DNA of 64,000 nucleotides from Ginglymostoma cirratum (taxonomy: Eukaryota), in contig JAHRHZ010000085.1 in the NCBI GenBank assembly GCA_024137785.1, positions 2,170,279 through 2,234,278 on the forward strand. The letters are read 5' to 3'. The notes beneath the pieces are model-generated. The model was not told the origin of the DNA. It saw nothing but the letters and a program-made list of their open reading frames with translations, and made no database searches. This document shows positions 24,541 to 61,623 of this stretch, piece after piece (the stretch's first letter is position 1; the number at the start of each line of letters is the position of its first letter). The position numbers were made by a program, and so were the translations under genes.

Positions 24541-24940
24541 NNNNNNNNNNNNNNNNNNNNNNNNNNNNNNNNNNNNNNNNNNNNNNNNNNNNNNNNNNNN
24601 NNNNNNNNNNNNNNNNNNNNNNNNNNNNNNNNNNNNNNNNNNNNNNNNNNNNNNNNNNNNNNNNNNNNNNNNNNNNNNNNNNNNNNNNNNNNNNNNNNNN
24701 NNNNNNNNNNNNNNNNNNNNNNNNNNNNNNNNNNNNNNNNNNNNNNNNNNNNNNNNNNNNNNNNNNNNNNNNNNNNNNNNNNNNNNNNNNNNNNNNNNNN
24801 NNNNNNNNNNNNNNNNNNNNNNNNNNNNNNNNNNNNNNNNNNNNNNNNNNNNNNNNNNNNNNNNNNNNNNNNNNNNNNNNNNNNNNNNNNNNNNNNNNNN
24901 NNNNNNNNNNNNNNNNNNNNNNNNNNNNNNNNNNNNNNNN
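24541..24940. other. Assembly gap (400 N)
   Basis: Run of n. Confidence 1.
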
Positions 24941-25694: not shown

Positions 25695-25750
25695 CTTCTT
25701 TTGTAACAGTGTAGCTGGCATTTACTGGAAATGAGCTCGAAACGTGATAT
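25695..25750 (-). pseudogene. 3' stub of a C1 exon (copy D), truncated by a Penelope insertion
   Basis: YHVSSSFPVNASYTVTKE plus donor AAG|GTAAGA, nearly identical to 59879-59934. Confidence 0.82.
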
Positions 25751-25751
25751 G

Positions 25752-26905
25752 GAGATAGTAGGAACTACCGATGCTGGAGAATCTGAGATAAAACGTTGTG
25801 GAGCTGGATGAACACAGCAGGCCAAGCAGCATCAGAGGAGCAGAAAAGTTGACATTTGGGGTCGACAACCTTCTTCAGAAATGGGGGAGGGGAAGGGGAT
25901 TCTGAAATAAATAGGGAGAGAGGGGGAGGAGGATAGAAGATGGAAAAAGGAGAAGATAGGTTGAGAGGAGACAGACAGGTCAAAGAGGCGGGGTTAGAAC
26001 CAGTGAAGGTGAATGTAGGTGGGGATTTAGGTGGGGGATAGGTCAGTCCAGGGAGGGTGGACAGGTCAAGGGGGCTGGATGAGGTGAGTGTGTAGGAGAT
26101 GGGGGTGGGGCTTGAGGTGGGAGGAATGGTTAGGGAGGTGGGGACTAGCTGGGCTGGTTTTGGGATGTCGTCGGGGGAAGAGAGATTTTGAAGCTTGCAA
26201 AGCGGTCCCCAAGCCTCAACTAGGTTTTCCTCTGCTTGACTTGGGGACCGCTTTGCAGAACACCTCCGCTTCGTTCGCAACGAAAAACTGCACCTCCCAG
26301 TCGTGAACCATTTCAACTCCCCTTCCCATTCCTTCGACGACATGACCATCCTGGTCCTCCTGCAGTGCCACAATGAACAGTGCAGGAACAGCACCTCATA
26401 TTCCACTTGGGAACTCTGCAGCCCAATGGTATCAATGTGGACTTCACAAGCTTCAAAATCTCCCCTCCCCCAACCGCATCCCAAAACCAGCTTGTTCCCG
26501 CCTGCCTAACCTGCCCTTCCTCCCACCTATCCCCTCCTCCCACCTGCAGCCCCACTCCCATCTCCTACTAGCCTCATCCCGCCCCGTTGGCCTGTCCATC
26601 CTCCCTGGACTGACCTATCCCCTCCCTAACTCCCCACTTACACTGTCCTTTACTGGCTCCACCCCCGCCTGTTTGACCTGTCTGTCTCCTCTCCACCTGT
26701 CTTGTCCTTTATCCATCTTCTATCCACCTCCTCCTCTCTCCCTATTTATTTCAGAATCCCCTTCCCCTACCCCATTTCTGAAGAAGGGTCTAGGCCTGAA
26801 ACGTCAGCTTTCCTGCTCCCCTGATGCTGCTTGGCCTGCTGTGTTTAGACAGCTCTACACCTTGTTATCTCAGATTCTCCAGCATCTGCAATTCCTACTA
26901 TCGCT
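25752..26905 (+). mobile_element. Penelope-like element (second family) with ~440-bp inverted arms
   Basis: GIY-YIG C-terminus LGDRFAEHLR..HFNSPSHS..IFHLGTLQPNGIN. The left arm is the reverse complement of ~26450-26905. Hammerhead core at 26778. Confidence 0.85.
26778..26805 (+). ncRNA. Minimal type I hammerhead ribozyme core in a Penelope terminal repeat
   Basis: CUGAAGA-AGGGUCUAGGCCU-GAAAC-GUC. Confidence 0.6.
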
Positions 26906-42270: not shown

Positions 42271-43649
42271 TGTCCAGCACTTGGTCTTTTTTGATTGGTT
42301 GCACCCACTAGATCGTCTTCTCATCACAGACATCATGTTAATGCATCTTCTACAGCAAACATATATCCTACATTGGACAGCAATGTCAAAACCACGTGCA
42401 CTTTGGCAACTGAAATCTCATAAAAACCTTTCATACTTGCACAAGTTATTCATTTGATTCAGACATCTCACCACTTTTCATAAAGAGCAAAATATTGCCC
42501 TTATACTTACACATTAATTTTCAGAAACTGTGTAACTGTGTCAAAAATATGATTTTTCAAATGTCCTCTAACACATTCCTGCAATGAGGAGTACTGATGC
42601 TTTAAAAGTTAACCAATGCATTATCAGAGACTGAATTGGTGAAATTATACCTGCAAAGATAAATGACTGCATTGTCAGGATACTTCTATCAGCTAGTTAA
42701 CAGTACAGAATCCAGAATCCTGAAGTATCTGATATTAATGAGTTTTGAAGTCACTATCACAATGGACATGTTTATCAATACCTAACTGTGAGATGAGGTA
42801 AGCATGGACTGGTGTAGATTAAGGATGCACGATGTGTAGAAAGAGATTGGCATGTCGTTGTGGTCATTGTGATGATCCCAACTGACATTTTTTTTAATCT
42901 GGATCAATCAGACCTCAGGTAGGAATCTGGCTTGATTGACCATAGCTTTATTTGTTTAGCTTTAACAAAACGTCGTCTCACAGAAACAAAATTGCAGATT
43001 ATGCTGCATCAACAAATCAAGTGCATTACAAAAGAGCAAAGATCAAATAGAATCATCAAAAGTTTCAATTTCCAATGCAAATTCAAAGATTTGAAGCACA
43101 TAGTTAAATGTATAATCCATTTAATCACAAAACATCACTTTGTAAATTGGTAAGAAAGAAATTTGCTTGTGAGTGGTACCCAAATAAAACAGTGCAATTT
43201 TCAATATTCTACACATGTAACACAAAGCAGATTGTTTGTAGCTGTTATCATAGTAGGTTTAAGCAACTTGCCAGGAGAAATTTTAGACTGCAACTGTGAT
43301 AACATCTTCCTGGAACTAACACACAACTGAACTTCTCAGAACTTATGTTAAGTCGGCTCTTTTGGATATCCTACCACTTCTATTTTTGGACTAACACAAA
43401 CTCTACACTTCAACGTAATCTAATTCACTATATCTGTCACATTACATCCATCCATTTCCAAGACCTTCACAGGAATTCACTACTCAAAAGTTTTCTCTCA
43501 GCAATGTTACATTTCTCTTCATGTAAAACAAAACGACTACTAATACTCTCTAACAAACATTTGATAACCCATCGTCCACTTTTGGAATTGTACATTCAAC
43601 TTACAAGGATTTTGCTGGGTTTGAAAGTTTTGAACTACAGCAAGACCTA

Positions 43650-44060
43650 ATTAGACTGGCGCTACTTTTCCTGGAGCATCAGAGGCTGAGGGGTAATTAT
43701 AGAGGTTTACAAATTCATGAGTGGTGTAAATAGGGTGAATAGCCAATGTCTTTTTCCCAGGGTAGGGGATTCCCCAACTAGAGGGCAATGGTTTAAGGTA
43801 AGAGGGGAAAGATTTAAAAGGGACCTGAGGGGCAACTTTTTCACACAGAGGATGGTGCTTGTATGGAATGAGCCGCCACAGGAGGTTGTGGAACCTGGAA
43901 CAATTACAGCATTGAAAAGGCATCTGGATGGGTACATGAATAGGAAAGGTTTGGAGGGATATGAGTCAAATGTTGGCAAATGGGACCAGATTAATTTAGG
44001 ATATCTGGTCGGCATGGAAAAGGTGGATTGAAAGGTCTGTTTCCATGCTGTACAGCTGTA
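43650..44060 (+). mobile_element. CR1 3' end
   Basis: RGNFFTQRMVLVWN. Confidence 0.8.
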
Positions 44061-45677
44061 TGGCTCTATGACCCTATTACTAATGTTGCTAGTTTGGAAG
44101 GAATGTTTGACAAACAAAATTCCATGAGTGCACAGAATCTATTCATCCCACAACTATGTCATGTAAACCGTTTTATTAAAGCAAATGTCATGATAAAAAA
44201 CTTCCAAGTTAGTTATTAACTTCAGATACAGGATGAAAGAACAGCCAGTTAGTAACTCAAAATCAGAAACATAAGCTTGCACTAATCATTATATATATTT
44301 AAATCCCACAAGGAAGTGTCAAACTGAATCAAGAATAACTTGAGTGGAAACATATACCTGTTTTACTTATCATAATAACGTAAACCTTGACATTTAGTTT
44401 TTACTGTAGTAAAACAATCAGCAGAATATTCCTCAAATTATGACAGACACTAATGTGAAACTGGAGTAACTGCAGAACTGCAAAAATTCAAAGGAAAATG
44501 AAAATTCTTGACATTAAATGGTCTTGACTTGTCAAGGTTTTTTGTTTCTGAGATGCTGTTAGTAGTTGGCAGGGAGATGTTTTGTTGAAACGTGTTGGCA
44601 GCCTAACAGGTGGGTTATCGAGGCTGAAGCATTAGTATAAACATTGGATGGATAGAGCACTACCATTTGTTACCTGCACTTTAAGTGTCATGTTTGAGTC
44701 GATAATATTGCGAATTAATGAAGTCAATTGGCAGTATGGTCACGTTAATGGGGCAGTAAGTCATTGACCCACACCAATTTTCTGAGATCATGGGTTAAGA
44801 TTCCATGATGGCAGAAGGGGAAAATTGGATCCAATTTTAAAATCCAGAATTGAAAGTCAGTTTAATTGTGACCATGTAACACTCATGACTTTTGTAAAAA
44901 ATATTGGAACCATTAATGTCCATTACAAAGTAAATGTGCGATCCTCATTTGCTTTGACCTGAATGTGACTCAAGACCCAATGTCATGTGGTCGACTCTTA
45001 ATGGTTCCCTGAACATTCTTCACAAGTTAACATGCAAGTAGGAGTGGGCAATAATTGGAGCCAGTTATCACTTGGGCCTATTTAGCTTCACAAAAGAAAA
45101 AAGAAAGGCATTAATATTTTGCAGAACAGTAATGACATAGACAGGACTGATAAAATCAGAAATATTGCTTGAATGATAGTAGATTGAACAAAAAAAGTCA
45201 AATCAAAAAATGTAATAAAACACCAACAAATTAAAAAGAATAAAACAATGCACAACTGATACATATGTTTGACACAGTAAGAACCATCTTACGCTGAAAG
45301 AAAAGACAAAAGGAAATGAAAATATCAGTATTTTCATGTTGAAACTAGCAGTGAAATAGTGGGAAAAATCTACCAGTTTAGGAGTTTTTTAAAAGTTATT
45401 CAAAAACAATAATATTTACTTCTTAGGTGAAACATAACAGAGAGTTCTAGAGATTTATGAGTTTAGTAGTTTGAATGAAGCCAGTTGCTATCTCAAATTG
45501 TGCATGTTAAACAAGTTTGAAGGCAAAATAGATTTAGTTCATGAGACATTAAAGGAAGTTAAGAAGTCAATGACTACTTTTTGAAAGTAATGAAAGACCA
45601 CAGAGAGGGCTGAACCAGACAGAAATGGATACAAAACACCCTTAATACCAATATCTTCTCATTTTATCTATAGGTCT

Positions 45678-45812
45678 TTAAGTTTGGCTGTTGGTTTTCA
45701 CTGCTGCATACAATGGAGTTGCAGTTTTGTGTTCTGGTTTCAATGTTAACTTGGGACCGTTCAAATTCAGAGTAGCGTAAGTCAGCTGGCTTTTTCTCAT
45801 GCTGTCTTTGGT
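45678..45812 (-). CDS. Terminal cytoplasmic exon with ITIM (LTYATL) and ITIM/ITSM-like motif (TPLYAAV)
   Basis: Acceptor aattttacag|. The phase-0 frame reads TKDSMRKSQLTYATLNLNGPKLTLKPEHKTATPLYAAVKTNSQT then TAA. This frame is not in the ORF track. Confidence 0.85.
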   Translation of the reverse strand, partial: TKDSMRKSQLTYATLNLNGPKLTLKPEHKTATPLYAAVKTNSQT

Positions 45813-48800
45813 CTGTAAAATTATATTGAAAGTAATTCATTTTTGCTCCAACGTTCATAAAATGCTAAGAATTTTTCAATGTTATCCAGGAACCAAATGA
45901 TTGAATTAAGAAAATAATTACTGTATTCAAACATATGAACTGAAAAGTACCTCTGCATATATTGTTCTTTCATCCTGGGGCTTCGGAATATTAGAATTCT
46001 TTGAGTGGACCAGTTTAAGATCAGCATACATTAATCTGTCTTCAACTGTCTCTTGTTTCCTCTGGAAAGTTAAAGTTTAATTCCATGAATTTATGTTTTC
46101 TGGAGTCAAGAATCAACATTTCAGAGTAATCAATGACAATTATTTTGTCTCCTTGAGTTTGCTAGCATTCTGTTACATTCTTAATAGTTGAAATCCACTG
46201 TATTCAATCTCTTTTCTCCACTCAGCAAAAATGAAAGCTGCCTCATTGCTCGATGGTGTAAGGTGTCCATGTTGGACTGGGGTGGACAAAGTCAGAAACC
46301 ACATGACACCAGGTTATAGTCCAAAAGGTTTGTTTGAAATCACAAGCTTTTGGATCCTCAGTCCTTCTTCAACTATCTGCAAATGTATCTGCAAATACTC
46401 ACTCTCTCTCTGTCTCTCCCACACATACACATAAATGCACACATGCATGTGAATCTAGGGAGGGAATTTGTATTTGCAGATACAGTTAATTTTGTTAAAA
46501 AGCACACAATTTATAGACAGTCAGTAAATGTGTGGCACTTTATAAATTATTACTTTAGAAATAAAATCAGTCTGACTCAAAACCAAGACACAAAAAATTT
46601 CTAAGCAAGGCCTCACACCTAACATTCATTGTCTGGCGGAAAGAGTCACCTTTGCTTTGCACGAATAAAAACTTTAATTCTCTCAGGACAGTGATTTGAA
46701 AGGAATTTGGGGATTCGCATGGACATAATAATGATTTAAGATTTAAGAGCACCTCGGGTTTATTTAATACGTCTTGATCAGTGGTGTGACCCTTTGATGT
46801 TGTACTTATAAATTCACTGTCTGATACTACCTCTCTCACTGACAGCTGAAGAAGGACTGAGGCTCCTAAAACTTGTGTTTTCAAGTAAACTTGTTGCACT
46901 AGAAACTGGTGTCTTGTAATTTTTGATGTTGTCATTGGCTGATGTCACCTTGCTCGCAAGCTATGAAAATTTATGTTTGAGTATGTTAAAACTTAGAAAA
47001 GGAACTCTGCAAAATTCAGTTTTCAAAGTACAAAATTATTGTATTAATTCAACATTATCAATTTTCAACATTCATACTGAAATCATTCAACATTACATCC
47101 TGCTACAGATTGAAGATGCTGTGAACGTTTTGCTCTAGATTTTGATGGAACTGATCTGAATTTTGTTTACAATGATAAATAAAGTTACTTAAAGCATGTC
47201 TCTTCATTTGGAAATAAAAACACAATTCAAACTGTGTGTAATGCCTAAACTGCTATGCTATCATTGGTTGTCTGGTGCATTAATTGGCTTCAAACTGGTT
47301 TTTCTTGTATTTTTGGCTTAATGCTTAAATTAGTAATTTAATTATACCGATAGAAGCAACCATTTATTGGTAAGATGAATAGTAATCAAACAATTAGATC
47401 TCATTAATTATGTCAATAGCACAGTTTCAATGATAATAAATGGGACAGTGAAGGTTTTTAGTGAAGATGAACATGCAAGCCAATTCCGTTGAATCTTTAA
47501 GGTACACAAAATGCCACACAGTATTTTCCAGCAAAGTGTTAACTTCTACCTGAAGATGTTTTTGTTAGGATAGCAAAATGAGGCAACAGATAATTTGGGA
47601 GCCTGGTCATGTAGAGAGTAAAGAAATAATTGAATAGTTAACCAATGGTGTTCCTTCCATTCAAAGAACAAAACACAAAATGGCAATTCTGTTTTACACA
47701 TATGCTCTCAGACTTTATATGCAATATTGTTTTAACAGAGGCAATTATTCATTCTCTTGAGATCTGCACCTCTGTACCTGACTCATTGAAATGCGGAGTG
47801 ACAACCTGACAAGACCAGGGGAAATGAAGGGAAGCATTAGCAAAGCTGAGAAACATGTTAAGTAACACAAATTCAAGGGCAGCTACTCAATGCATGTAAC
47901 ACTGACAAGAAGCTAAATGATTAAAAACAAATAAATAGAGATGAATGGCTCTGGCCTAATTGACATTATAAACACATCACTGCAGGATGATTAGGAGAAC
48001 TGATTATCCAATGATATTTAGTATGGACAAAGGAAAAGGGGATATGTTCATATTACATTAATAGTAATGGATGAGATCTGTATCTTAGGATCACAGATTA
48101 GAATAAAAAATGAGGAGTCTTCCATGGTGGAGCTAAGAAACAGTAAGCAGGAGGAAACGTTGGCAGTTGCTTATAAGCCACAAAGGCCAGTACTAATGTG
48201 AGGCACAGACAAAATAAAAAGACCAGTGTAGTGTGGTACATAGTTTTTGCAACAATCATGGCTGGATCCAATCAAGACATAGGCTTGACAAAGAGATGAG
48301 TACTATAGATGTGAAGGATGAGTTTCAGAGTGTGTTAGGGAGAGTTTTCTGGAGCAGTTAGTCTGTTTAAGAACAGACTAGAGAACTATGTTTATCTTGC
48401 AACGTGCGACAAATAATAATTAACAATATTGTTGCAAGAGAATCTTGAAACATGAATAACTGTACAATGATGGATTTAGCCATGACAAGTATGATAGTTG
48501 TTAATGTTTGTAATACTTTCAATCATTTCTTTCTGTATGTTACTTTCATGGTAAAGGCTAAGTTGCACTTTTGTCATGACAATAAAACTGTTTGACTTCA
48601 TCCAGATAGATTAAAACATTACTTTGATTGCAGTGACTGAATCATTCAGATAATTTTCAAAGCAAAGTCGATGGCTACAGGCTTTACCTCATCTTTGGGT
48701 TGAGTAGGATTTCTTGCTTTTTCCTTTGAACCTGGTGGCAATAAATTTGACATCAATTGTCAAGAGAGCCGTGATGTTTGCATTCATCAGTAAGATAGCA

Positions 48801-51800
48801 AAATACACTATGATTCACGTCGACACAAGGTGTAATAAGCTAACTGGATTCAGGATGTAACTGAACATGTTGAACTCCAGTACAATTATTTAGTTTGTGT
48901 TGAAGCTGTCAAAATATTACTTCATCAGCGAAATTCACCGGACTACCTTCAGATCTGAAAAGATAAGATTTAACAGACTAAAGCTACGACCCTGAACATG
49001 CAATGTTGGCTTTGAAGTGACACAAATGCGTGTAAGTAGTTTCACATCATATATTTATTTTAACTGGACAAGTCAGATTTCAGTACCCAATAATGTGAAT
49101 GCACTTCAGGTTGTTTAATCAACACATGTGTGGAAGTTGTTCCATTTCGTATGTATATTCCTGTTCGTACCTTTAGATATAATGAATAGAAAATGCTTCG
49201 CAACCATCACTGTGCATAATAGAATTGCAAGTGCTCCAGTGGCACATCCAGCGACAACAGCAACCCTGATTTTGGAGGCAAAATCTATGAGATGAACATA
49301 AAATTAAAATTAGAATTGGTTGTGAGAACCAGAAACTTATACATTTAAATATCATATGCTTCTTTTCTCATTACACTGCTTTGGTAATATTCTACTACTG
49401 TACATGAAATCTCACATGTTAACTTCTCCCCTCAGCTTTTCTTTATGCAGTTGGATACAAAGAGGGTAAATTATCGGAATTTGGAGAAATAAAAGCAGAT
49501 GAAACAATAAATATAATTAATATATCAAAATCCGGCAGTATTCAATTAATAAGTGTTCAGATCAGATGACTGTGGGACAAGTTTCCTTGAGATTCATTTT
49601 TGAGCACAAATTATTTTATACATTTTCAAAGAAAATCTTTCTCCATGTGCAAACTACCCAACTGTTGAGGGCAGACAATTGCATAGTCATCGTTCACTGG
49701 ACTAACAATAGAGAACTCCAAGTTCTTGGCTCGCGGATTTTAATGCCACCAGGGCAGATGGTGAAATTTGAACTCAATATAAACCTGTTTGTCAGAAAAT
49801 CACATGGTCTCCTTGTTATCGGAAAGATGTTGTTAGACTTGAAAGCATTCAGAAAAGGTTTGCAAGGATGTTTTCAGTTTTGGAGCATTTTAGCTACACA
49901 TAGAGGCTGAATAGGCTGGGGCTATTTTCTCTGGAACCTCAAAAGCTGAGGGGTGACCTTACAAATGTTTGTAAAATCATTCCAGCTATGGATAGAATGA
50001 ATAGTCAAGGTATTTTCCCCAGGGTGGGGCAGTCCTAAACTGGAGGACATAGGTTTAAGTTGAGAGGAGAAAGATTTAAAATGGACCTAAGGCGTAACTT
50101 TTTCACACAGAGGGTGGTGTGTGAATGGAATGAACTGCCAGAAATTGAGGTAGCATCTGGTACAATTACAACATTTAAAAGGCATCTGGATGGGTCTATG
50201 AATAGGAATGGTTTGGAGGGATATGTGCCAAATGCTGCCAAATGGGACTAGGTTAATTTAGGATATTTGGTCGGCAAGAACGAGTTGAAACTAAGTGTCT
50301 GTTTTTGCATAGTACATCTCTATGACTGACTGTATGATCAGGTCCTTTGGAAGTAATTTTGCCAACGTTATTTGTCATGCAAGTGACTCACTGCAAATTA
50401 GATGATTGTTAACCACCCCCTTGGCAATTACAGAAAGATAATAAATGTCCTCCCAGTAAACAATACCCTCAATGAAATCAAAAGATCTGCTAAACTCTGT
50501 TGAATGTTATGATAAATGGGTACACTCTTAGCTAAGATTACAAGGCATGGAGCTGGATGAACACAGCAGGCCAAGCAGCATCATAGGAGCAGGAAAGCTT
50601 GACATTTTGGGCCTAGACCCTTCATCAGAAATTATTTTTGATGGGGTCATCAGGATTTCTGATGAAGGGTCAGGCCCGAAACGTCAAGCTTTCCTGCTCC
50701 TATGATGCTGCTTGGCCTGCTGTGTTCATCCAGCTCCACACCTTGTTATCTCAGATTCTCCAGCATCTGCAGTACCTTTTATCTCTGATACACTCTTAGC
50801 TAAATCGTTTTCTGAACATATATGAAGATATTCAGGGGTCTTTGGAAGAAGTAACACAACAGGGATACTCAATGAATGGCGTGACACTCGGAAGCTCAGA
50901 TGAGTGGGAAAGGCTTGGACTTCTGTCCACAGATCCCTGAAGGTTGCAGGGCAGTTCACCATGGTGGTTAAGAAGACATACAAGGCATATGATCTTGTCA
51001 GTAATGGTGTAGATTTATAACAGCAAGGAGACTACTTTGGAGTTTAACAGGACTTTGGTTAGGCCACAGCTGGAGCACTGTGTGCAGTTCTGGTTGCCAC
51101 ACGGTTATAAGTGTTCGGCTTAAAACATCTCCAAGACAGACTATTAAGCCTTAAGGGTTAATTGGAAATGGCAATGTGCAATTGAAGACAAGTGGAACAT
51201 CACAAGGCTTTCAGCAAAACAGCTTGCCTTGCCTGGGAGGGAAAAAATATCGTGCAGTTAAAAAGGAGCTATGTTGGAAGTGTTTATCAATTTGTTTTTG
51301 TTAGAAGTCACAGGACACTAGGTTATAGTCCAACAGGTTTTTTTTTAGAATCACAAGCTTCCCAACCGCTGCTCATTCATCAGGAGAAGATGACCGGACG
51401 AAACAGCAGACCTCAGAAAGCTTGTGATTTCCAATGAACCTGTTCGACTATAGCCTGGTGTGTGTGACTTCTGACTTTGTCCACCTCACTCCAACACTGG
51501 CACCTCCATGTCATAATTTGTTTTTACGCAGTGGAATGCCTGGAAAACCGCTGTAAACGCGCCGAAATAGTAAAACAGCGTGTAACTTGAGACTTAGAAT
51601 AGTATTAATGTCGGGGACTTGGCACCATCCATTGAAAGTTCACCAACGGGCTCAAGACCGGCGCCGTGGAACTGGAGATCGAACTCCATGTACCTCCATC
51701 GCCAAAGTCCCCAGAGAGCAGAGAGGCAGTGTGAAACTCACATGTTAAAGATATATCTCAGTAGATTAACCTGACGATTTAACTTTCATATATTAAGTGA

Positions 51801-54800
51801 GTTCAGACACATATGTATCATATGAACTCACTTTATTAATTCATAACATGTAATTGGTATTTCAACCCAATAAATTAACCATATACTGAAGTACACGCGC
51901 CTTTCTATCATCATTTTGATCAGACCTACAAGAACCAGTTAGGACTTTCCACCCAACAAGACATTGGGCATTGCGAGCAGCATCGGAGGAAAATGTCCAA
52001 CAAGATGGTACTTTGGATGTGGAAACATTGTGTCCCGGGATGTTCATTTAATGATTAGTTCAGTGTGTTAGGTTGCCTGTAGCTGGGAAAGGGATTGGGA
52101 ACAGAATCCCGAGGCATAACTCTGTGCAATGAAGGGCAATCTGTGGGAGGTAGGTTTCCCAAAGCAAACCAAGGGGTCACCCACATGGGGTGGATCCTGC
52201 TGAGCGACCTCCCGTATGCTGCCCCGGGAGGTGCGAGATTTGAAGGAGGTGAACGGGTCATTGACCGCTGCGCTGGCCGTAGCAGAAGCTTGCGCTGAAG
52301 GAGGCGGCTTGGACTGGTCAGGAAAGAACAGATAAAGTCAAGCAGAAGCAGACCGGTAGAGCTGGCAAATTGGTCACAGTCCAGCACAAAAAGTGGGCAA
52401 ACCGGGGAATCCAGCTAATGTGCCCTTTTTATTCGCTTCAACTGATCGGGTCCCCGATCACTGGGACTGGTATTCGTCCGATTTGGAGTACGCGGGGGCT
52501 GATGTTGAAGGATTCCCTAATGGTGATAACGTGCCAGTTAGCGCGCCCGTTAGTAACTAATACAGCTAAAGGTCACGGCCAAAAGGCCCCACACAGCATG
52601 CTCGCATTGTGCGGGATTACTCACTGACAGAATTGCAGGATTTGGGGAAAAGAATTTCCGTCAGAAAGCAGGGCACTGGGACCTTGGCGATCTCGGCTGT
52701 GGGACTCCATGGTGTCTAATGTTTCTCTCAATAATGAGGAGTCTGGAATATGGGAGGGTTGTTTCCAAATGAAGTCACGTATAATGCTCTGAATGGGGCC
52801 CATGGGCCTGGAACATCAGCTGCATGATCACGTGTAGCAGTGAGAACTAAGTATCTGGACACCATGGAATGGGAGCTGGAAGCAGTCCTGTGGCGTACAA
52901 TATCACTGGGAAGTTCCTGATTGAGACAGTTAGTTACACAAACGGGACTGTTCACGAACAATTTCCAGGGATGGACCAAGATGCTTCCACAACCCGAATG
53001 AGATCCAGCTCATTCAAAATGGACCAACTCATCTCAGAGGGACGCTGCTGGCAACGTTGGGGCCAGCTCAAGGCAGACCGGTCGGTGAAGTTGTCAGAGA
53101 TAAAAGGTACTGCAGATGCTGGAGAATCCGAGATAACAAGCATGGGGCTGGATGAACACAGCAGGTCAAGCAGCATCATAGGAGCAGGAAAACTTGACGT
53201 TTCGGGCCTAAATTTCTGATGAACGGTGAAGTTGTCATGTTGTTGTGGATGCGGAAATGCGTCAAGCTTATGCAGGAGAGCGGTAACAAGGGAAACCCAG
53301 GAAAGGATGTGAAGCGAAAGAAAAAAGTCAGCAAAAAGAGATGTTTGCTATTTTGTGGAAAACAGGAACAGGCAGGTCTGAAATAGACAGAAAATGCATG
53401 GTATCACCACCAGTGTTATATGTTCCCTCTGGAAGAAGACTTGTAAATCCAGTAAGGGACCAAAGGGGACATCGACCCCTCCCATGGTGTGAGACCCCAA
53501 TTCTGATTTAGGTGCTCCTTCCCAGGAAAAAAAAAGATACGTCAGAGTTTCTTCTGTACCTCACATGAGAGGATCTGGAACAGATTTGGAGAGTGAGTAA
53601 TCTCCTAGACTGGGAAGATGGCCGGGACACTGAGATGTGACTGAAAGGACGAGTCCAGAGGCCACAAGTCCCTAACACAGTTCATTGGAGAAATGGAAAT
53701 AAATAGCAAGTTATGTTCTTCCTCGGTATCTTCCAGACATGTGCGAACAAAAATGATTGTAAGTAGATTCTAGAGAGCAGAAAGACCGGTGGTGCGGACA
53801 TTGGTGCGATTGGTATTTGGGAATAGACTATCGCGGATAAATGAAACATAAATGAAAGTACCAAAGGCATGGATGTTGTGAGGGGTAAGGAACGATGGAC
53901 TCCAATAGGAAAGTATTTTTTGGTCTCTCAAGGGTGATTGTGGTCGTGGGGAAAACGAAGTATTGAGAGCACAATTAGACCATAGACTCTATCTAAGTGT
54001 TAGTGACAGCAAGGGTTGAATGAGCGATTGTCTTCCTGTATAACAACCTTGTATGGCCAGTAAATAAACCAGATGGTAAAGACGGTCGATGACTGACAGT
54101 AAAACCAACACGCCCCACGTTGGCATCAGCTGTCCCAGATATTGTAACATTACTGGAGTCACTGTAATTGGGAACTGATGAATGGTAAACCGTAAGCGAC
54201 CTAACTAATGCTTTCTTCTCCATTGCCTTTGATGAGAATTCACAGAATCAGTTTTATTTCACATGAGAGGGTAGAGTGTACACAGTTTGTAGGTTGTGGG
54301 GGGGCTACTTGCTCAGTCCAACTCTCTGCTATGGTTGAATAGCCTGGATCTGGAGATGCTGTCTCTCTCCAGCGATGTAAAAGCGATATAACAACAGATG
54401 ACATCTTGCTACGTGGCTCGTTAGAAGACGCAGTAGCCACGATCAATAGCTACGTTGACTCAGAATCGGAATAGAGACTGGGAATTTATTCCTAAGAAAA
54501 ACCAGAGCCAAGCCAGTGTGTTATTTTACTGATAATACTTTGGGCGGGGGAGACTGCGTGATTCCTGACAAAGTGAGAAATAAAGTCAGTGAGCTGCAAG
54601 CCCGGACAAATAAAGAAATCACCCAAAGCTTTTTGGCGATATTGGGTTGTTGAAGATGCAAATCCCTCGCAACTTAATTACACCTCATCGCTGAAGTGGT
54701 TTCTTACTATGACTTTGGGACACAGCACCTAAGGGAAATGTTGCTTGGCAGTGGCTCATATGCGGGGTGATTAGCTGGTGTGTGAAAATGCTTCAGATAA

Positions 54801-57800
54801 AAGGGACGCAAACCAATTTAGGGATTATTATGGTGGACCATCAATTCAGGTTCATTAAAATTTCACAGTTATCCCATCTTCAGTAGCATATCATCTGCAC
54901 CCCAGTGATCAAACCGAATATTGTTTTTACTGTCAGAGTGGAAATAACCAATGGAAATAAATTATCTTCCCATTGCCGCTCTGTAAACACACCATGAACA
55001 TTACAGAGGCGAGGCCGGAGAGATGTACTCACTATTCTAGATTGAGCAGAGGCGAGAATGCTTGTGTTAACTTCCATGGGTATTGAAGCTCTAAAAAATA
55101 AAATTGCTAAAGCTAGGCAACTAACCAAATATTAACCTATTCGTTGCGTGGACCAAATCATTAGCTCATCGAGATTAAGCAAATTGATTTTTGACTGAGA
55201 TAACAAGGTGTAGAGCTGGATGAACACAGCAGGCCAAGCAGCATCAGAGAAGCAGGAAAGCTGACGTTTCGGGCNNNNNNNNNNNNNNNNNNNNNNNNNN
55301 NNNNNNNNNNNNNNNNNNNNNNNNNNNNNNNNNNNNNNNNNNNNNNNNNNNNNNNNNNNNNNNNNNNNNNNNNNNNNNNNNNNNNNNNNNNNNNNNNNNN
55401 NNNNNNNNNNNNNNNNNNNNNNNNNNNNNNNNNNNNNNNNNNNNNNNNNNNNNNNNNNNNNNNNNNNNNNNNNNNNNNNNNNNNNNNNNNNNNNNNNNNN
55501 NNNNNNNNNNNNNNNNNNNNNNNNNNNNNNNNNNNNNNNNNNNNNNNNNNNNNNNNNNNNNNNNNNNNNNNNNNNNNNNNNNNNNNNNNNNNNNNNNNNN
55601 NNNNNNNNNNNNNNNNNNNNNNNNNNNNNNNNNNNNNNNNNNNNNNNNNNNNNNNNNNNNNNNNNNNNNNNNNNTCCTGCTCCTCCGATGCTGCTTGGCC
55701 TGCTGTGTTCATCCAGCTCGACACCTTGTTATCTCAGATTCTCCAGCATGTGCAGCTCTTACTATCTCTGGTTTTTGACTGACATGGTTTGCAAGTTTGC
55801 GGATAGCACCGTTTAGAAAATGTATCACACCGGGATAAATCCTAGTTCCAAAGCTAACTGAATAGATTGTCAGCTGCTCGAGCTGTGTAGTTACAGCACA
55901 AAGACATGAAGTGATCAATGTATTGCAATCTGTACATCTGTTGTCTTGGAAATAATTATTTCACCTCACTATTACTAACTTAATGCTTCTGCCTGTCTTG
56001 TTAAAGAGTAATTGCAATGCCACAGTACGCAATGCCGATTATTTAAAACTTAATACAGCAGCAAATATGGTGCCAGTTTATCAACCTATCTCATCAGTCA
56101 CGGGGTACGCTGCTGACATCAGTATTTTATGGCACATGGCTGTAAACAGCAATTAGACCCATTGGGAACAATAGGCCTGGTAGGCCCCTTATATTTCCCT
56201 ACCTTTGAAACATCATACAATCATTTATGAAATTGGTCTGAACCACATATTTGATTCTAGAAATCATTCTGTCCACCTTATTGATAAGAGAGAGGAACCA
56301 TCTGCCAACCTATTTCGGGACAAAACATATGTTATCTATGATGAAATTAGATATAATCACCACATAATCGAAGAATGGGAGCGATAACTGTGTATCGAGT
56401 ACAGTACCTCCAGTTGTTATATTTAAGAAATTGCAGGCTTCCCTGACCAAGCATCAGCAGGTTCGTTCTTACTTGGCAACAAAACACCATGGCTTCTTAC
56501 AGCAAGAAACTGCCATGACTTACAGCCCTGATCAATTGATTCACAAAGCAGATAATTTAGGAACCCTTTCTATGTACCATTGGTGGGTCATATTTAACGG
56601 ATGGTCACCAGAAGCTTCAGCAGTACTCTCACTGTTATGGGATCCAAACGTTTATATTATTTTTAACTGTTTCTCGTTTTTATGTATCTGTGTGATGGCC
56701 TGCAAACTATATCACATGTATCAAAAACTTGTAGCTATTGAGCAGCATGTACGCGCTTGTAAAAGGTTTTGAGAAACGATTTTGAAGACATCAATGGGTG
56801 TTGTGTCGTCCAGGCTTAAAAATGACATCTCCAAACCAGACCGTTCAGGGTTAATCATTTAAGATTAATTGCACATGAAAGTCAGCAACTGCAGACAAGT
56901 GGAAAATCACAGTTTCAGTGTGAAAAAGGCTTTCTTTGGCTGGGAGGGAACTGCATGAACTTGGGTGGGTGGAAAACAGAACAATGTACAGTTAAAATTG
57001 TCCTTGTTCAAAAAAGGGAATAGGGATAACCGCGGAAATTCAGACCAGTTAGTCTAACAGCAGTGGAGGACAAATTACAAGAAAGGGCTCGAAGAGATAG
57101 GATTTATGGTCACTTGGATAGGCACAGTTTGATTCGTGATAGTCCGCATGGATTTGTGAGGGGTAGAACATGCCTCACAAACTTTATTGAATTCGTTGAA
57201 GAGGTCCCCAAACACGTGGATGAAGGTAGCACAGTGGATGTGGTACACATGGATTTAAGTAAGGCGCTTGATAAGGTTCCCTATGGTAGGCTCATGCAGA
57301 AGACAAGGAGGCATGGGGTAGGGGAAATTGTGGCAGATTGGATTCAGAATTGGCTGACCCTTACAAGACAAATGGTGGTACTGGATGGAAAATATTCAAC
57401 ATGGTGCTCAGTTACGAGTGGTATACCACAAGGATCAGTTCTGGATCCTCTTCTGTTTGTGATTTTTGCAAATTATTTGGAAGAAGGATGGAACTGGTGG
57501 ATTAGTAAGTTCGCAGATGATATGAAGGTGTGTAGAGTTGTGGATAGTGCGGAGGGCTGTTCTAGGTTACAAAGGGACATTGATAGGATGCAGAGCTGGG
57601 CTGAGAAATGGCAGATGGAGTTTAACCCTGAAAAGTGTGAGGTGATTCATTTTGGAAGGACAAATTTGAAAGCAGAATACAAGGTTAACAGAAAGATTTT
57701 TGGTAGTGTGGAGGACCAGAGGGATCTTGGGGCTCATATCCACAGTTCCCTGAAAGCTGCCACCCAGGTGGATAGAATTGCTAAGAAGGCGTATGGTGTG

Positions 57801-60800
57801 TTACTTTTCATTAATAGAGGGATTGAGTACAAGAGCTGTGAAGTTATGCCCCAGCTATACAAAACCCTTGTTCGGCCACATCTGGAGTATTGTGTCCAGT
57901 TCTAGTTGCCTCATTACAAGAAAGGTGTGGAAGCATTGGAAAAGGTGCAAAGTAGATTTAACAGGATGTTGTCTGGAATGGAGGGAAGGTCTCAGGACGA
58001 AAGGTGAGAGCCCGAGAGCTCTTCTCTTCACAACGACGAAGGATGAGAGGTGACTTGATAGAGGTATGCAAAATGATCAGAGGTATAGAAAGAGTGGACA
58101 GCCAGAGAATATTTTCCTCGGTTGGACGTAGCTATTATGAGTGGGCATAGTTTTAAAGCGAGTGGAGGTAGATATAGGGGAGACGTCAGAGCTAGGTTCT
58201 TTCCTCAGAGAGTGGTCCGGGCGTGGAATGCCTTGCCGGAGAGTTTAGTCGAGTCGGCCTCATTAGGGGCATTTAAGTGGCTAGTAGATAGGCATATGGA
58301 TGATAGTACAAGTTTGGGGTAGAGGTTAGATAGACCTTAGGTTTAGAGTAAAATTTCGGCACAACATCGTAAGATGAAGTGCCTGAACTGTGTTGTACTG
58401 TTCCCTGTTCTAAAAAAGACACATCTGGAAGACTTTTTCAGCTTATTTTCTCCGCAGTGGAATACCAGGAAGAGTTGCTGTAAGTTTTATGAAATGGTGA
58501 TATAGCATGTGACAGTAGATTCGAAACAGTATTGATATCGGGGATTTTGCCCCATTCATTGGACTTCCACCGTTGGGTTGGTGTTCATGAGACGGGCACC
58601 GTGGAATCTCAAATAAAGTTCCAAGTGATGTCATCGCCAAAGTCCCCGCCGAGTCCGAAAGGCAGTATGAGAATCACTTCTTCATACGGATATATGCGGA
58701 GTTTAACCTAACCATTCAACTTTAACGTGTATCGAAAATTTAAAATGTCAACTACTAATTCATATGTGTATGAAGTATGAACGAAATAAATTAGCTCTAA
58801 AAATGAGTGCACCTGTATTGTAATTATTTTAGTCTAACGTAAAACAATTCGTTATAAACTTTCGACCTAACACAGAAAGATGTAATTCCACTGGGGAGGG
58901 TGCAGAGGGGATTCGCCGGGATGCTGCCTGGTTTGGAACATTTTAGCTGTGATGTTTCTGGAGAAGCATGGACTGTTTTCTTTGGGGCAGGGAAGGTTGA
59001 GGGGAGCCTACGATTGAGCTGTATACGATTATGAAGGCAGAGACAGGGTGGATGAACAACAACTGCCCACTTTAGTTTAAGGATGAATAACGTGAGGTCA
59101 TAATTTGCAGAGGGAAAGGTAAGTGGTTTACAGCTACATGGAGGATGTATTTTTCACAAAGAGGGTGTTAGGCATCAGTAACGCGCTGCCTGGGAGCCTA
59201 GTGCAGGTAACAAACCTTTCAGTAATGTACGTGGACTACGCCGTAACATTCAAGTCTCTGGGCCAAGTGCTGGAAAGTGTGATTCTTGTAAATATGAGGG
59301 CTGCACTCAAGGGACAAAAAGGCTTTTTCTGTGCTGTATATCCTGATGATATTCCTCTCACAAACGGTGAGGACTGCAGATGCTGGAATACAGAATAAAT
59401 GAATGTGGAGCTGGAAAAGCGCAGTAGGTCAGACAGCAGCGCGGGAGCAGGAATGCCATCACTTCGGCCCGAAACATTCACTTTCCTGCTCTTCGGCTGC
59501 TCTCTGACCTGCTGTGCATTTCCAGCTCCACATTTATTGACTAATTTTCCTCTCTATCTATTTGTCAGCCTTTAATGTATCCAAAAAAATAAATTTAATA
59601 CTGAATGTATCTTCGGAAATGAATTGTAACTTTGTGTATTTAATTAAAACTATGGGACCTTTCAACGACGAATATTCACTTTTGGCAGTATCTCACCTGG
59701 CAATATACTACACACATTTGGAATAAGCTAAAGAAAGGAAACCTTTGACCATACAATAGTGTCAAATTTCGGGATTGACACTATCACCGGGAAATGACTG
59801 TCGTAATAACGTTTTACTTCGTCAACCTTTTTAAACGATGCCTGAACGATTAACGTACAATGTGTCATAGAATCTTACCTTCTTTCGTAACAGTGTAGCT
59901 GGCATTTACTGGAAATGAGCTCGAAACGTGGTATACTTGACACACGTAGACTATGTCACTTTCGGGCATATTTGGCACGTCCAAGGAGCTGACCACTTCA
60001 TAAAGTCCCTCGCCTTTTATCTGTTTTACGTTTCTAAATCCAGTGAGGATTTGTGTACCGTTTCTGCGCCAAGTCAGGTTGAAGTCTTCCGGATAAAAGC
60101 CAGATGTCCTGCATTGCAGCTCGAAAGAAACAGACGAAGGGTCTTTTAAGGGTATCAACACAATGTTTAGGGGAGCTGGTGAAGCTGCATTGTAAATAAA
60201 ATTCACATAAATGTAGACATTGGACTTCTACTCCAAAACTGAAATGATTTACTGAACTAACCAACTGTTACTTCTGGGTATGGCGGCTGCATTGATCGTC
60301 ATTATTTATGCGAGTAGGGGTTGCTGTTACTTTTATCATGTAGCGACCTCCTAATGCAATTGATACATCAATTTATACTATCTTGTGTCTCTATTAATGA
60401 GTAAATATGTTCGAGTTTTCATACTGTACACTTCTCGCAATCAGCGGTTTGGGAACAGGATCGTTGAAAATGAGACGGCCGCAGTCCAAGCGAAGGGAAA
60501 GGGAAAATACGGAGTCCGTATTTTCAAATTTGAAAATAAAATGACATTTAAAGTGCTTAATAACCTCGAGACAATACATTCTGTTACTCCGTGCTTAAAT
60601 TGTAAAAGTGCTTCCTTGGAAATCTTGCATTAGCTTTCAATGTAACACAAATTTAAATACCGTTTGCTGACACAGTGCAATTTCTGAACTGTGTAGTGTC
60701 GCTGGTGATGCTTTTTTTTTAAACGGCATTATTGAACGTGTCATTCGGAAGAAGTGAACAATCTTATATTCACTGCATGCATTTAAGAACATGTAACTGC

Positions 60801-61548
60801 TAACTTGCATTTACTGTTCATTGGAACCAAGTTGACTGAACGTTTACTTTGGTAGCACTAACCGTATACTACAAGTTGCGTAGCTTGTTTCTCAGATATC
60901 CTTCCATGCTGATTTTCGAATCTACAGTAATATGTTCCCGCGTCCAGGACAGTCACATTGAAGAGTTTGAGGTCGGCTCTATGTTTCGTTACCGTGAAGA
61001 GTTTTCTGCTGTCTTCCTTCAGAAGCATCTCATTACCTTCTCTCCACCAGAAAACACTTATCTTTGAAGGGTTGGACTCGAAGGGGAAAAAGCACCGCAG
61101 GATAGCTGTTGTATTTATCAGGGTTTTTACTTGCATAATATCCGGAGTAACATCGTCCGAAGTGCAGACAGCAACTGTTAACAAAAGCCATATATACAAT
61201 GATTAAGCAGGGAAGATGAACTACAACATGAAATAAACTAATTAATCCGAGACAGTAGCTCTTTGTTTTCTCCGTCACTCTCTGAATTCCTGCCCTAACT
61301 GAACTACTGCAAATATTTTTTCACTTATTCAGAGGATTCTTAAAACAAGGAACTCAGACGTAAAAAGCATATGAAAAAAAGTGTCCGATTATCCATCAAG
61401 TATCAGTTCAATTATTCTTCCACATCAATCAAGGACATTTCAAACACTGCAGGGAGGAGCATGTACCTGGATACGAAATGCACAGAAAACATAAGTTCCA
61501 CAGCGATCCACTCACAAACATAGTGACAAAGAAACTCTGGCAGAACAT
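45678..61548 (-). CDS. Intact 6-exon Ig-superfamily receptor gene (leader-V-C1-TM-cyt-ITIM), SIRP-like inhibitory receptor, 330 aa
   Basis: Exons of 82+312+306+114+44+135 nt = 993 nt splice in frame with GT-AG junctions (phases 1,1,1,1,0). Protein: MFCQSFFVTMFVSGSLWNLCFLCISYPV...LRC..FWWR..DAGTYYC..ATQLVVY-ASP..LQCRTSGFYPEDFNLTW..YVCQVYH..-TM VAVVAGCATGALAILLCTVMVA-..LTYATL..PLYAAV..stop. Confidence 0.85.
46260..46930. mobile_element. Penelope-derived terminal-repeat fragment with inverted ends
   Basis: Begins with acaccaggttatagtcc..gaaatcacaagc and ends with its approximate reverse complement; interior resembles 8780-9330. Confidence 0.6.
48688..48731 (-). CDS. First cytoplasmic exon
   Basis: Acceptor attgccaccag|, donor GAG|GTAAAG, 44 nt, phase 1/0. 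Reads GSKEKARNPTQPKDE. A decayed homologue with matching flanks is at 20911-20962. Confidence 0.75.
49171..49284 (-). CDS. Transmembrane exon
   Basis: Acceptor tcatctcatag|, donor AAG|GTACGA, 114 nt, phase 1/1. Reads DFASKIRVAVVAGCATGALAILLCTVMVAKHFLFIISK. A homologue sits directly after the divergent C1 exon at 21919-22037. Confidence 0.85.
49830..50340 (+). mobile_element. CR1 3' end
   Basis: RRNFFTQRVVCEWN. Confidence 0.8.
50521..50803. mobile_element. Palindromic Penelope-derived mini-element with a 15-bp TSD
   Basis: TSD tacactcttagctaa at 50521-50535 and 50789-50803, with ~100-bp inverted arms. The site is empty in the paralogous sequence near position 50. Confidence 0.85.
50659..50685 (+). 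ncRNA. Minimal type I hammerhead ribozyme core
   Basis: CUGAUGA-AGGGUCAGGCCC-GAAAC-GUC. Confidence 0.62.
51103..51957 (+). repeat. 5' LTR (interrupted by a ~215-bp Penelope-derived insert at ~51300-51515)
   Basis: Collinear similarity to 56802-56997 plus 58413-58872 (e.g. gacaagtggaa, cgcagtggaat, catcgccaaagtcccc, ending in aaca). Confidence 0.75.
53083..53237 (-). mobile_element. Penelope-derived short insert in ERV gag with a 14-bp TSD
   Basis: TSD cggtgaagttgtca at 53083-53096 and 53224-53237; absent at the paralogous site near 1795. Confidence 0.82.
55188..55782. mobile_element. Palindromic Penelope-derived element in ERV env, spanning an assembly gap
   Basis: Inverted arms either side of the gap; TSD tttttgactga. 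Confidence 0.78.
55275..55674. other. Assembly gap (400 N)
   Basis: Run of n. Confidence 1.
56802..58872 (+). repeat. 3' LTR (interrupted by CR1 at ~56998-58412)
   Basis: Follows the env stop and a PPT-like tract; matches the 5' LTR. Confidence 0.75.
56998..58412 (+). mobile_element. CR1 LINE 3' fragment inserted in the 3' LTR
   Basis: 280-aa RT ORF (GIPQGSVL, FADD). Absent from the LTR copy at 23340-24293. Confidence 0.92.
59879..60184 (-). CDS. Ig C1-set domain exon
   Basis: Acceptor acaatgcag|, donor AAG|GTAAGA, 306 nt. C1 motifs LQCRTSGFYPEDFNLTW and YVCQVYH. Confidence 0.93.
60863..61174 (-). CDS. Ig V-set domain exon
   Basis: Acceptor ttgttaacag|, donor ACG|GTTAGT, 312 nt. B-strand Cys (LRC), C-strand Trp (FWWR), D-x-G-x-Y-x-C (DAGTYYC) and G strand ATQLVVY are all in one exon. 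Confidence 0.93.
61467..61548 (-). CDS. Leader/signal-peptide exon of the intact receptor
   Basis: ATG at 61548 gives MFCQSFFVTMFVSGSLWNLCFLCISYP, then a phase-1 donor CAG|GTACAT. The same frame, length and donor occur in the paralogue at 5771-5852. Confidence 0.75.
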
Positions 61549-61623
61549 ACATTGGATGTAAAAAGAGGACTGATGAAAGTTTGTTGGAACATAAGTTATG
61601 CATCGATTTTAATCACTTGCTTC

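What the first reader, a model, noticed from the sequence alone, without database searches (positions are those of the whole stretch)
45678..61548. Complete germline-joined V-C1-TM-ITIM receptor gene spread over 16 kb of repeats
Seen: six exons splice in frame to a 330-aa type I membrane protein with a signal peptide, a V-set domain, a C1-set domain, five N-x-S/T sequons, an uncharged TM core and a tail with LTYATL and PLYAAV 23 residues apart. The ORF track shows only V and C1; the leader, TM and tail exons are in frames it misses. Established: C1-set domains are largely confined to Ig/TCR, MHC, tapasin, SIRP and B7-H6-type molecules, and paired tyrosine motifs of this kind recruit SHP-1/SHP-2. 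Inference: an inhibitory SIRP-like or antigen-receptor-like leukocyte receptor of cartilaginous fish with a one-V-one-C1 ectodomain, probably from a poorly characterised family.
Basis: partly seen in the sequence, partly recalled or inferred. Interest (0 to 1): 0.85.

Follow-up and report, generated by a model that had tools for sequence, protein, structure and literature searches.

The report
Shark SIRP-like V-C1 inhibitory receptor gene
This is a real, apparently intact and at least partly transcribed shark gene for a membrane receptor with one variable-like and one constant-type antibody domain and a SIRP-alpha-style inhibitory tail. It belongs to a large family that annotation pipelines already call "SIRP-alpha-like", so it is a sound but not unprecedented find.

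Summary
The gene is real and lies on the minus strand. It has seven exons (367 aa), not six (330 aa). An RNA contig with no mismatches joins the TM exon to 48731-48688, then 46061-45951, then 45812 onward.

The second domain is a true C1-set domain by Pfam and by fold. The first is a compact V-like domain with no C'' strand and no J motif; its nearest folds are I-set.

The N gap lies inside the 10.6-kb intron 3, so no reading frame crosses it. Its flanks match, in register, the two halves of one palindromic repeat. The C1-to-TM splice (59879|49284) was not seen in RNA. It rests on three points: matching phase, no rival TM exon, and every exon except the leader matching one zebra-shark protein best (C1 80%, TM 70%, tail 76-79%).

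The tail is two SIRP-alpha-like modules, each with two tyrosines 23 residues apart. The best reading is an inhibitory receptor that recruits SHP-1/2. The family spans sharks, rays and chimaeras and is pipeline-named PTPNS1-like. I found no paper on it. This scan has already reported the same family at other places in this genome.

The parts
61467..61548 (-). Exon 1: start codon and split leader (27 codons plus 1 base, phase 1 donor). A second in-frame ATG at codon 10 is an alternative start.
   Evidence: Sequence read. The 3' part of the leader resembles family leaders, 9-10 identities over 15-18 residues to P0165, P0021 and P0166. No RNA evidence was obtained.
60863..61174 (-). Exon 2: N-terminal Ig domain D1. 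It is a compact V-like domain with two N-glycosylation sequons, WWREG in the C strand, DAGTYYC in the F strand and no G-x-G J motif.
   Evidence: Pfam ig 3.5e-09, V-set 1.9e-06, I-set 5e-06. AlphaFold model pLDDT 87.6 with seven strands. Foldseek best matches are NCAM, titin and OBSL1 I-set domains, then NKp44 and VNAR. 57/103 identical to P0162.
59879..60184 (-). Exon 3: C1-set Ig domain with three N-glycosylation sequons. Phase 1 at both ends.
   Evidence: Pfam C1-set E 2e-10, 41.3 bits against a cut-off of 21. PDB sequence hits to Ig CH domains and SIRP-alpha. Model pLDDT 88.9; Foldseek best matches are MHC class II beta-2, MHC I alpha-3 and Ig CL, TM about 0.8. 81/101 identical to P0162; sister to it at 100/100 support.
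49285..59878 (-). Intron 3 (10.6 kb). It holds the N gap 55275-55674, a reverse-transcriptase fragment on the + strand at 57063-57905, and copies of a palindromic repeat.
   Evidence: RVT_1 E 9e-22. Repeat families D1, D2, I1 and I4. No further C1-like exon and no alternative phase-1 TM-like exon in the sequenced part.
49171..49284 (-). Exon 4: stalk, uncharged transmembrane helix and the start of the cytoplasmic part. Phase 1 at both ends.
   Evidence: Sequence. 26/37 identical to P0162. RNA contig of run X1 covers 49260-49171 and splices to exon 5; one X8 read shows the same joint.
48688..48731 (-). Exon 5: 44-nt cytoplasmic exon (phase 1 to 0).
   Evidence: Found by a splice and phase scan. 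10/14 identical to P0162. Both joints are present in the X1 contig.
45951..46061 (-). Exon 6: first tail module (37 aa, phase 0/0) with ITIM LMYADL and, 23 residues on, TIYAE(T).
   Evidence: Joints 46061|48688 and 45812|45951 in the X1 contig with 0 mismatches. 28/37 identical to P0162. 15/30 identical to the second tail module of rodent SIRP-alpha.
45372..45812 (-). Exon 7: second tail module with LTYATL and PLYAAV (23 residues apart), stop at 45680-45678, and at least 306 nt of 3' UTR.
   Evidence: The X1 contig covers 45812-45372. 34/43 identical to P0162. Sequence.

Best explanation
A single seven-exon gene on the minus strand (61548-45678) encodes a 367-aa type I membrane glycoprotein. 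Its parts, in order, are a split leader, a compact V-like domain, a C1-set domain, an uncharged TM helix and a cytoplasmic tail.

The tail is built from two repeats of one module: an ITIM, about 22 residues containing K-P, then a second tyrosine. This is the plan of the SIRP-alpha tail.

The gene is a member of a chondrichthyan SIRP-like V-C1 receptor family. Its apparent orthologue is zebra shark LOC125459911.

Inferred mechanism: the fast-evolving D1 binds an unknown ligand. Src-family kinases then phosphorylate the tail tyrosines. Each 23-residue-spaced pair docks the tandem SH2 domains of SHP-1 or SHP-2, which damp activation of the cell.

Shown here: exon structure, domain types, splicing of exons 4 to 7, and family membership.

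Inferred, not shown: the C1-to-TM junction, phosphatase recruitment, cell type and ligand.
For: - Exons: canonical splice sites, with phases 1,1,1,1,0,0.
- RNA: contig record 5 of run X1 (686 nt, 0 mismatches) joins exons 4-5-6-7.
- Domains: Pfam C1-set E 2e-10. The C1 fold matches MHC and Ig constant domains.
- One gene across the gap: Stegostoma P0162 is the best match for every exon except the leader, on both sides of the gap. The values are V 55%, C1 80%, TM 70%, E5 71%, E6 76% and E7 79%.
- Tree: the window's C1 is sister to P0162 at 100/100, inside a chondrichthyan clade at 100/99.
- Collinearity with SIRP-alpha: P0162 aligns to rodent SIRP-alpha across the V/C1 boundary (E 8e-9) and across C1, TM and the first ITIM (E 3e-7).
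- Tail: exons 6 and 7 each align to one SIRP-alpha tail module.
- Gap: its flanks match one palindromic repeat copy in register.
- Rival exons: there is no competing TM or C1 exon in the sequenced intron.
Against: - No read or contig crossing 59879|49284 was obtained. The gap could hide sequence.
- Expression of the V and C1 exons is only hinted at: about 10% of the stretch's words are held by runs X1-X3.
- RNA depth is very low: under 1 read in the poly-A run X8 and none in X9.
- Only two of the four tyrosines fit the strict ITIM consensus. TIYAET has T at +3 and PLYAAV has P at -2.
- The C1 tree does not resolve a link to tetrapod SIRPs.
- The family profile scores UrIg2 (1e-31) above SIRP-alpha (7e-27) in the PDB.
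- The other family copies in the window are decayed, so local decay is common.
Confidence: 0.8

Rival explanations
1. Two unrelated pieces brought together by the assembly. In this reading the leader, V and C1 exons are a remnant or a separate short gene, and the TM and tail exons belong to another gene whose 5' exons lie in the gap or were lost.
For: - An N gap of unknown true size lies between them.
- The C1-to-TM junction was not seen in RNA.
- The window holds several broken copies of the family.
- The gap sits in a repeat that occurs several times, so two different copies could have been joined.
Against: - Both halves match the same Stegostoma protein best, by wide margins, and in its exon order.
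- Both junction sides are phase 1.
- All exons on both sides are intact, unlike the decayed copies.
- The gap flanks fit one repeat copy in the same orientation and register.
- No other TM-like phase-1 exon lies downstream of C1.
Confidence: 0.1
2. The reader's six-exon, 330-aa form, which skips exon 6, is the main product. The tail would then carry only LTYATL and PLYAAV.
For: Exon 6 is phase 0/0, so skipping it keeps the frame. Family members differ in the number of tail modules.
Against: The only RNA contig across this part includes exon 6. The orthologue model P0162 and other family members also include it. No 48688|45812 joint was listed.
Confidence: 0.07
3. The family is not a SIRP relative. 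It would be a separate non-rearranging antigen-receptor-like lineage, near UrIg/UrIg2 or Ig light chains, that acquired a similar ITIM tail independently.
For: - The family profile's best PDB match is UrIg2 V-C1-C2-C3, and Ig light chains align over V plus C1.
- The C1 tree leaves the SIRP link open.
- Pipelines also name members tapasin-related-like, NCR3LG1-like or MHC class II beta-like.
- There is one C1 domain, against two in SIRPs.
Against: - The similarity covers whole 31-residue tail modules, both tyrosines included, not just the ITIM hexamer.
- Collinear V/C1 and C1/TM/ITIM alignments to SIRP-alpha exist.
- Rodent SIRP-alpha was the only non-chondrichthyan hit of the P0021 search.
- A skate member has V-C1-C1.
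- Lungfish SIRP-like proteins carry the same tail modules.
Confidence: 0.2

Closest known systems
Chondrichthyan 'tyrosine-protein phosphatase non-receptor type substrate 1-like' proteins. The nearest is Stegostoma tigrinum LOC125459911 (P0162, 381 aa); others include Heterodontus XP_067905931 (P0021).
   Same: They share the exon order and domain plan: V-like domain, C1, TM, short exon and two tail modules. Identity to P0162 is 55-80% per exon. The window's C1 is sister to P0162 at 100/100 and sits in a clade with 100/99 support.
   Different: The species differs: no identical protein is in the collections. The P0162 model has a different, probably mispredicted, N terminus. D1 has diverged far more (55%) than the rest.
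Mammalian SIRP-alpha (SHPS-1, PTPNS1, CD172a)
   Same: Both have a V-type domain directly followed by C1-set, a single uncharged TM helix, and a tail of two modules, each with an ITIM plus a second tyrosine about 23 residues on. Alignments: 15/30 identities for exon 6 against the second SIRP-alpha module; a collinear BLASTP match. SIRP-alpha domains 2 and 3 are C1-set (PMC2785349).
   Different: This gene has one C1 domain instead of two. D1 is short, with no C'' strand and no J-like G-x-G bulge in this gene. The second tyrosines read YAET and YAAV rather than YASI and YASV. CD47 binding is unknown. Orthology is not resolved by the C1 tree.
UrIg / UrIg2 of elasmobranchs (PMC12227049; PDB 9dmx)
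   Same: Both are non-rearranging single-exon V domains followed by C1-type domains in cartilaginous fish, with a split leader. UrIg2 is the best PDB match of the family profile.
   Different: UrIg2 has a canonical VJ domain and 3 to 11 C domains, and the paper reports no ITIM tail. This gene has one C1, no J motif and a SIRP-type tail. In the tree, the multi-C1 chondrichthyan proteins fall outside the family clade.
Ig light chains and TCR chains
   Same: They share the one-V-one-C1 ectodomain and phase-1 exon borders. Light chains align to the family profile across both domains.
   Different: This gene shows no rearrangement signals and no separate J segment. It is a germline-joined single V exon, with a signalling tail of its own instead of reliance on CD79 or CD3.
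Teleost NITRs (from my own knowledge, not tested here)
   Same: They are non-rearranging V-type receptors in multigene clusters, with ITIM-bearing and charged-TM forms.
   Different: The second NITR domain is I-type, not C1-set, and NITRs are known only from bony fish.

Membership tests
Chondrichthyan SIRP-like V-C1 receptor family (pipeline-named PTPNS1-like) | The C1 domain falls inside the family clade | tested here: met
   Family clade of 28 rows at 100/99. The window's C1 pairs with Stegostoma P0162 at 100/100.
Chondrichthyan SIRP-like V-C1 receptor family (pipeline-named PTPNS1-like) | Leader, V-like, C1, TM and tyrosine-module tail in this order | tested here: met
   Exon model. It is collinear with P0162, P0021 and P0161. 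The C1-to-TM link itself is inferred.
SIRP family (SIRP-alpha type) | N-terminal V-type domain directly followed by a C1-set domain | tested here: met
   Pfam and fold results. The V/C1 boundary of the orthologue aligns to that of rodent SIRP-alpha.
SIRP family (SIRP-alpha type) | Three-domain ectodomain V-C1-C1 | tested here: not met
   There is only one C1 exon, with no other C1-like match between 59878 and 49285. The orthologue P0162 also has one. The gap's content is unknown.
SIRP family (SIRP-alpha type) | Cytoplasmic tail with four tyrosines in two ITIM-containing modules | tested here: met
   The four motifs are LMYADL, TIYAET, LTYATL and PLYAAV, with spacings of 23, 14 and 23 residues. 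Each module aligns to a SIRP-alpha module.
SIRP family (SIRP-alpha type) | Groups with tetrapod SIRPs in a phylogeny, to the exclusion of Ig/TCR/MHC/UrIg | tested here: inconclusive
   The C1 tree leaves the family, the sarcopterygian SIRP C1s and the multi-C1 proteins in an open polytomy. No Ig, TCR or MHC references were available.
SIRP family (SIRP-alpha type) | Binds CD47 and recruits SHP-1/SHP-2 when phosphorylated | not testable with these tools
   This needs binding assays.
SIRP family (SIRP-alpha type) | Conserved synteny with the SIRP locus | not tested
C1-set Ig domain | Pfam PF07654 above the gathering score, and a C1 fold | tested here: met
   41.3 bits against 21. Foldseek best matches are MHC II beta-2, MHC I alpha-3 and Ig CL, at TM about 0.8.
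V-set Ig domain (VJ type) | Nine-strand V fold with C' and C'' strands, and a J-like F/x-G-x-G-T-x-L-x-V G strand | tested here: not met
   There are 55 residues between the cysteines. The model has seven strands and no C''. The best folds are I-set. The G strand lacks G-x-G, though many relatives have GNGTGT.L.V. The Pfam V-set match is partial, at 28.5 bits against 26.
ITIM | (I/V/L/S)-x-Y-x-x-(I/V/L) | tested here: met
   LMYADL and LTYATL fit. PLYAAV fails at -2 and TIYAET fails at +3.
UrIg / UrIg2 | Canonical VJ exon followed by several C domains | tested here: not met
   One C1 exon and no J motif. Description of UrIg2 is in PMC12227049.

The most novel reading that the evidence does not exclude
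The family is the cartilaginous-fish counterpart of SIRP, kept in an ancestral one-V-one-C1 form. If so, an ITIM-signalling, non-rearranging V-C1 receptor shaped like a single antigen-receptor chain already existed at the base of jawed vertebrates. The V-C1-C1 SIRPs of tetrapods would then be a later elaboration. This bears on the idea in PMC2785349 that SIRPs sit close to the antigen-receptor precursor.
Probability: 0.3. Interest if true: 0.55.

Novelty: new member of a known kind. Interest (0 to 1): 0.35.

Why it matters
C1-set domains are nearly confined to antigen receptors, MHC molecules and a few partners. Non-rearranging V-C1 genes in cartilaginous fish therefore inform how antigen receptors arose.

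This gene adds a well-defined intact member, with RNA-supported tail splicing, to a large SIRP-like family that seems to exist only as pipeline annotations.

Its value is as a curated gene model and as an entry point. It could be used to study ligand, cell type, SHP recruitment and paired short-tailed forms. Its fast-evolving D1 next to conserved C1, TM and tail is also of interest.

It is not a new kind of system. The same scan has already met the family at several other places in this genome.

Tried and rejected
I chose the TM and tail side. The contig stops 24 nt short of the 49284 acceptor, and no loose end there was listed.
- Run X9 gave no reads, and X8 gave under 1x depth on the exons.
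All searches were done exon by exon by reference, or with database homologues.
- The search for homologous proteins with P0162 found no protein identical to the window's gene.
- Literature searches for shark, chondrichthyan or elephant shark together with SIRP found nothing relevant. A search for 'PRARP' gave mostly unrelated papers.
- UrIg membership was considered and rejected.
- An alternative TM exon inside intron 3 was sought and not found.
- Complex prediction was not used, because unphosphorylated tail peptides would not be informative.


Full report
**What is in the sequence**

The ORF list shows the two Ig exons on the minus strand at 61199-60858 and 60206-59865. Reading the DNA and scanning for phase-compatible exons gives seven coding exons with GT..AG borders:
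- E1, 61548-61467: leader.
- E2, 61174-60863: first Ig domain, D1.
- E3, 60184-59879: C1 domain.
- E4, 49284-49171: stalk and TM helix.
- E5, 48731-48688: short cytoplasmic exon.
- E6, 46061-45951: first tail module.
- E7, 45812-45678: second tail module, stop included.

The phases are 1,1,1,1,0,0. The coding sequence is 1,104 nt including the stop codon and encodes 367 aa.

E6 is phase 0/0, so leaving it out stays in frame.

- Five N-x-S/T sequons lie in the ectodomain.
- The 22-residue TM core is uncharged.
- LTYATL and PLYAAV are 23 residues apart.

E6 adds LMYADL and TIYAE(T), also 23 residues apart.

The leader has a second in-frame ATG at codon 10. From there it resembles family leaders more closely.

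**RNA evidence**

One call of read laying was available, with at most 6,000 letters. I laid 43500-49400.
- Contig record 5 of run X1 is 686 nt long, has depth 8.5 and no mismatches. It runs 49260-49171 | 48731-48688 | 46061-45951 | 45812-45372.
- All three skipped parts end CT..AC on the + strand, which is GT..AG for the gene.
- One raw read of the poly-A run X8 shows the E4|E5 joint.

Exons 4 to 7 are therefore spliced as modelled, E6 is included, and the 3' UTR is at least 306 nt.

Depth is very low, and run X9 had no reads. The contig ends inside the TM exon, so the C1-to-TM junction (59879|49284) was not observed. Runs X1-X3 hold about 10% of the sampled words of 59800-61600. This hints that part of the V or C1 exons is also present in RNA assemblies, but I could not lay it.

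**The gap**

The 400 N at 55275-55674 lie in intron 3 (59878-49285), so no reading frame crosses them.

The flanks are the two arms of a palindromic repeat (I4). An intact copy of that repeat stands at 50532-50787. The left flank matches it with an offset of 4663 and the right flank with an offset of 4983. If this copy is whole, only about 80 nt are missing and the two sides are continuous.

This is consistent with continuity but does not prove it. Two different copies of the repeat could have been joined.

The sequenced part of the intron holds:
- a reverse-transcriptase fragment on the other strand;
- no further C1-like exon;
- no alternative phase-1 TM-like exon.

**Domains**

E3 is a C1-set domain.
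- Pfam PF07654 scores E 2e-10, at 41.3 bits against a cut-off of 21.
- PDB sequence hits are Ig constant domains and SIRP-alpha.
- The model has pLDDT 88.9, and its best Foldseek matches are MHC class II beta-2, MHC I alpha-3 and Ig CL, at TM about 0.8.

E2 is less clear-cut.
- Pfam ig, Ig_3, V-set and I-set all pass or nearly pass their cut-offs.
- There are 55 residues between the cysteines.
- The model (pLDDT 87.6) has seven strands and no C''.
- The best fold matches are I-set domains, with NKp44 and a shark VNAR among them.

Many relatives carry a J-like GNGTGT.L.V G strand. This gene and its nearest relatives have lost the G-x-G. I call it a compact V-like domain.

**Relatives**

A full HMMER scan with the C1 exon found many single-C1 proteins of 200-450 aa. 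Their sources are sharks, rays and chimaeras. Their pipeline names are mostly 'tyrosine-protein phosphatase non-receptor type substrate 1-like' or 'signal-regulatory protein beta-1-like'. Some are named tapasin-related-like, NCR3LG1-like, MHC class II beta-like or uncharacterised.

The closest is Stegostoma tigrinum LOC125459911 (P0162). Exon by exon, identities are:

| Exon | Identity to P0162 |
|---|---|
| V-like D1 | 57/103 |
| C1 | 81/101 |
| TM | 26/37 |
| E5 | 10/14 |
| E6 | 28/37 |
| E7 | 34/43 |

P0162 is the best match for every exon except the leader. This holds on both sides of the gap, which is the main argument that the two halves are one gene.

In a C1 tree, the window's domain is sister to P0162 (100/100) inside a chondrichthyan clade (100/99). 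The link to coelacanth, lungfish and rodent SIRP C1 domains is unresolved.

No protein identical to this gene was found.

**Why SIRP-like**

- The orthologue aligns to rodent SIRP-alpha collinearly across the V/C1 boundary (E 8e-9). It also aligns across C1, TM and the first ITIM (E 3e-7).
- E6 aligns over 31 residues, both tyrosines included, to the second SIRP-alpha tail module (15/30 identical).
- E7 aligns to the first module.
- The tail has the SIRP-alpha plan of two ITIM-plus-second-tyrosine modules.

From established knowledge of SIRP-alpha and PECAM-1, tyrosine pairs at this spacing engage the tandem SH2 domains of SHP-1 and SHP-2. That step is inference here.

By ectodomain alone the family profile is about equally close to UrIg2 (1e-31), SIRP-alpha (7e-27), SIRP-gamma and Ig light chains. 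The SIRP label therefore rests largely on the tail and on collinearity. The V-C1-C1 feature of SIRPs is not met.

**Context**

The other family exons in the window carry stops, frameshifts or deletions. They lie at 5478-4166, 13077-12811, 22452-21922 and 25764-25693. This gene is the only intact member here.

D1 has diverged much more from the orthologue (55%) than C1, TM and tail (70-80%). That pattern is expected of a ligand-binding domain under changing selection; this is inference.

**Literature and earlier scan notes**

The held library has the SIRP-alpha structure paper, which stresses the V-C1 link to antigen receptors (PMC2785349). It also has the UrIg papers (PMC12227049 and PMC10751288). 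I found no paper on this chondrichthyan family.

The scan's own notes show the same family reported at several other places of this genome, with the same reading.

**Verdict**

This is a real gene. It is a new member of a known, pipeline-annotated but apparently unstudied family, and is of moderate interest.

Noticed in passing
window 4166-5478, 12811-13077, 21922-22452, 25693-25764 (all minus strand): Four further copies or fragments of the same V-C1 family, all damaged. Copy A has a frameshift in V and a stop in C1. Copy B has a deletion and a frameshift in C1. Copy C has a C1 lacking the conserved W region, followed by a TM-like ORF with an arginine. The fourth is only the last 24 codons of a C1 exon, lying beside the second N gap (24541-24940).
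   Followed up: partly
window 50532-50787, 53140-53210, 55195-55770, 59403-59473: A palindromic repeat of about 220-250 nt (83-nt arms 93% complementary, 57 nt apart) occurs several times in intron 3. The assembly gap sits at the centre of one copy, which may be why the assembly broke there.
   Followed up: partly
window 43697-44090 and 46258-46454: Very high summed depth in the RNA runs, in the thousands. Nearly all reads fit only in part and run on into unlike sequence. These look like abundant interspersed repeats, not part of this gene's transcript.
   Followed up: no
window 27370-29990 (+) and 57063-57905 (+): LINE-type retroelement remains. The first has an endonuclease (Exo_endo_phos_2) plus reverse transcriptase split by frameshifts. 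The second is a 280-aa RVT_1 ORF inside intron 3 of the receptor gene.
   Followed up: partly
family proteins P0044, P0074, P0113, P0030 (other species): Short-tailed family members end their TM helix with a conserved D-H pair (..IIVDHV..) instead of carrying an ITIM tail. They are possible adaptor-coupled, activating counterparts of the inhibitory forms.
   Followed up: no
P0032 (Amblyraja radiata) and P0160 (Heterodontus francisci): The skate member has two nearly identical C1 domains (V-C1-C1). The horn-shark member has its tail modules duplicated to six or more tyrosine motifs. Both domain number and tail module number vary by exon duplication within the family.
   Followed up: no
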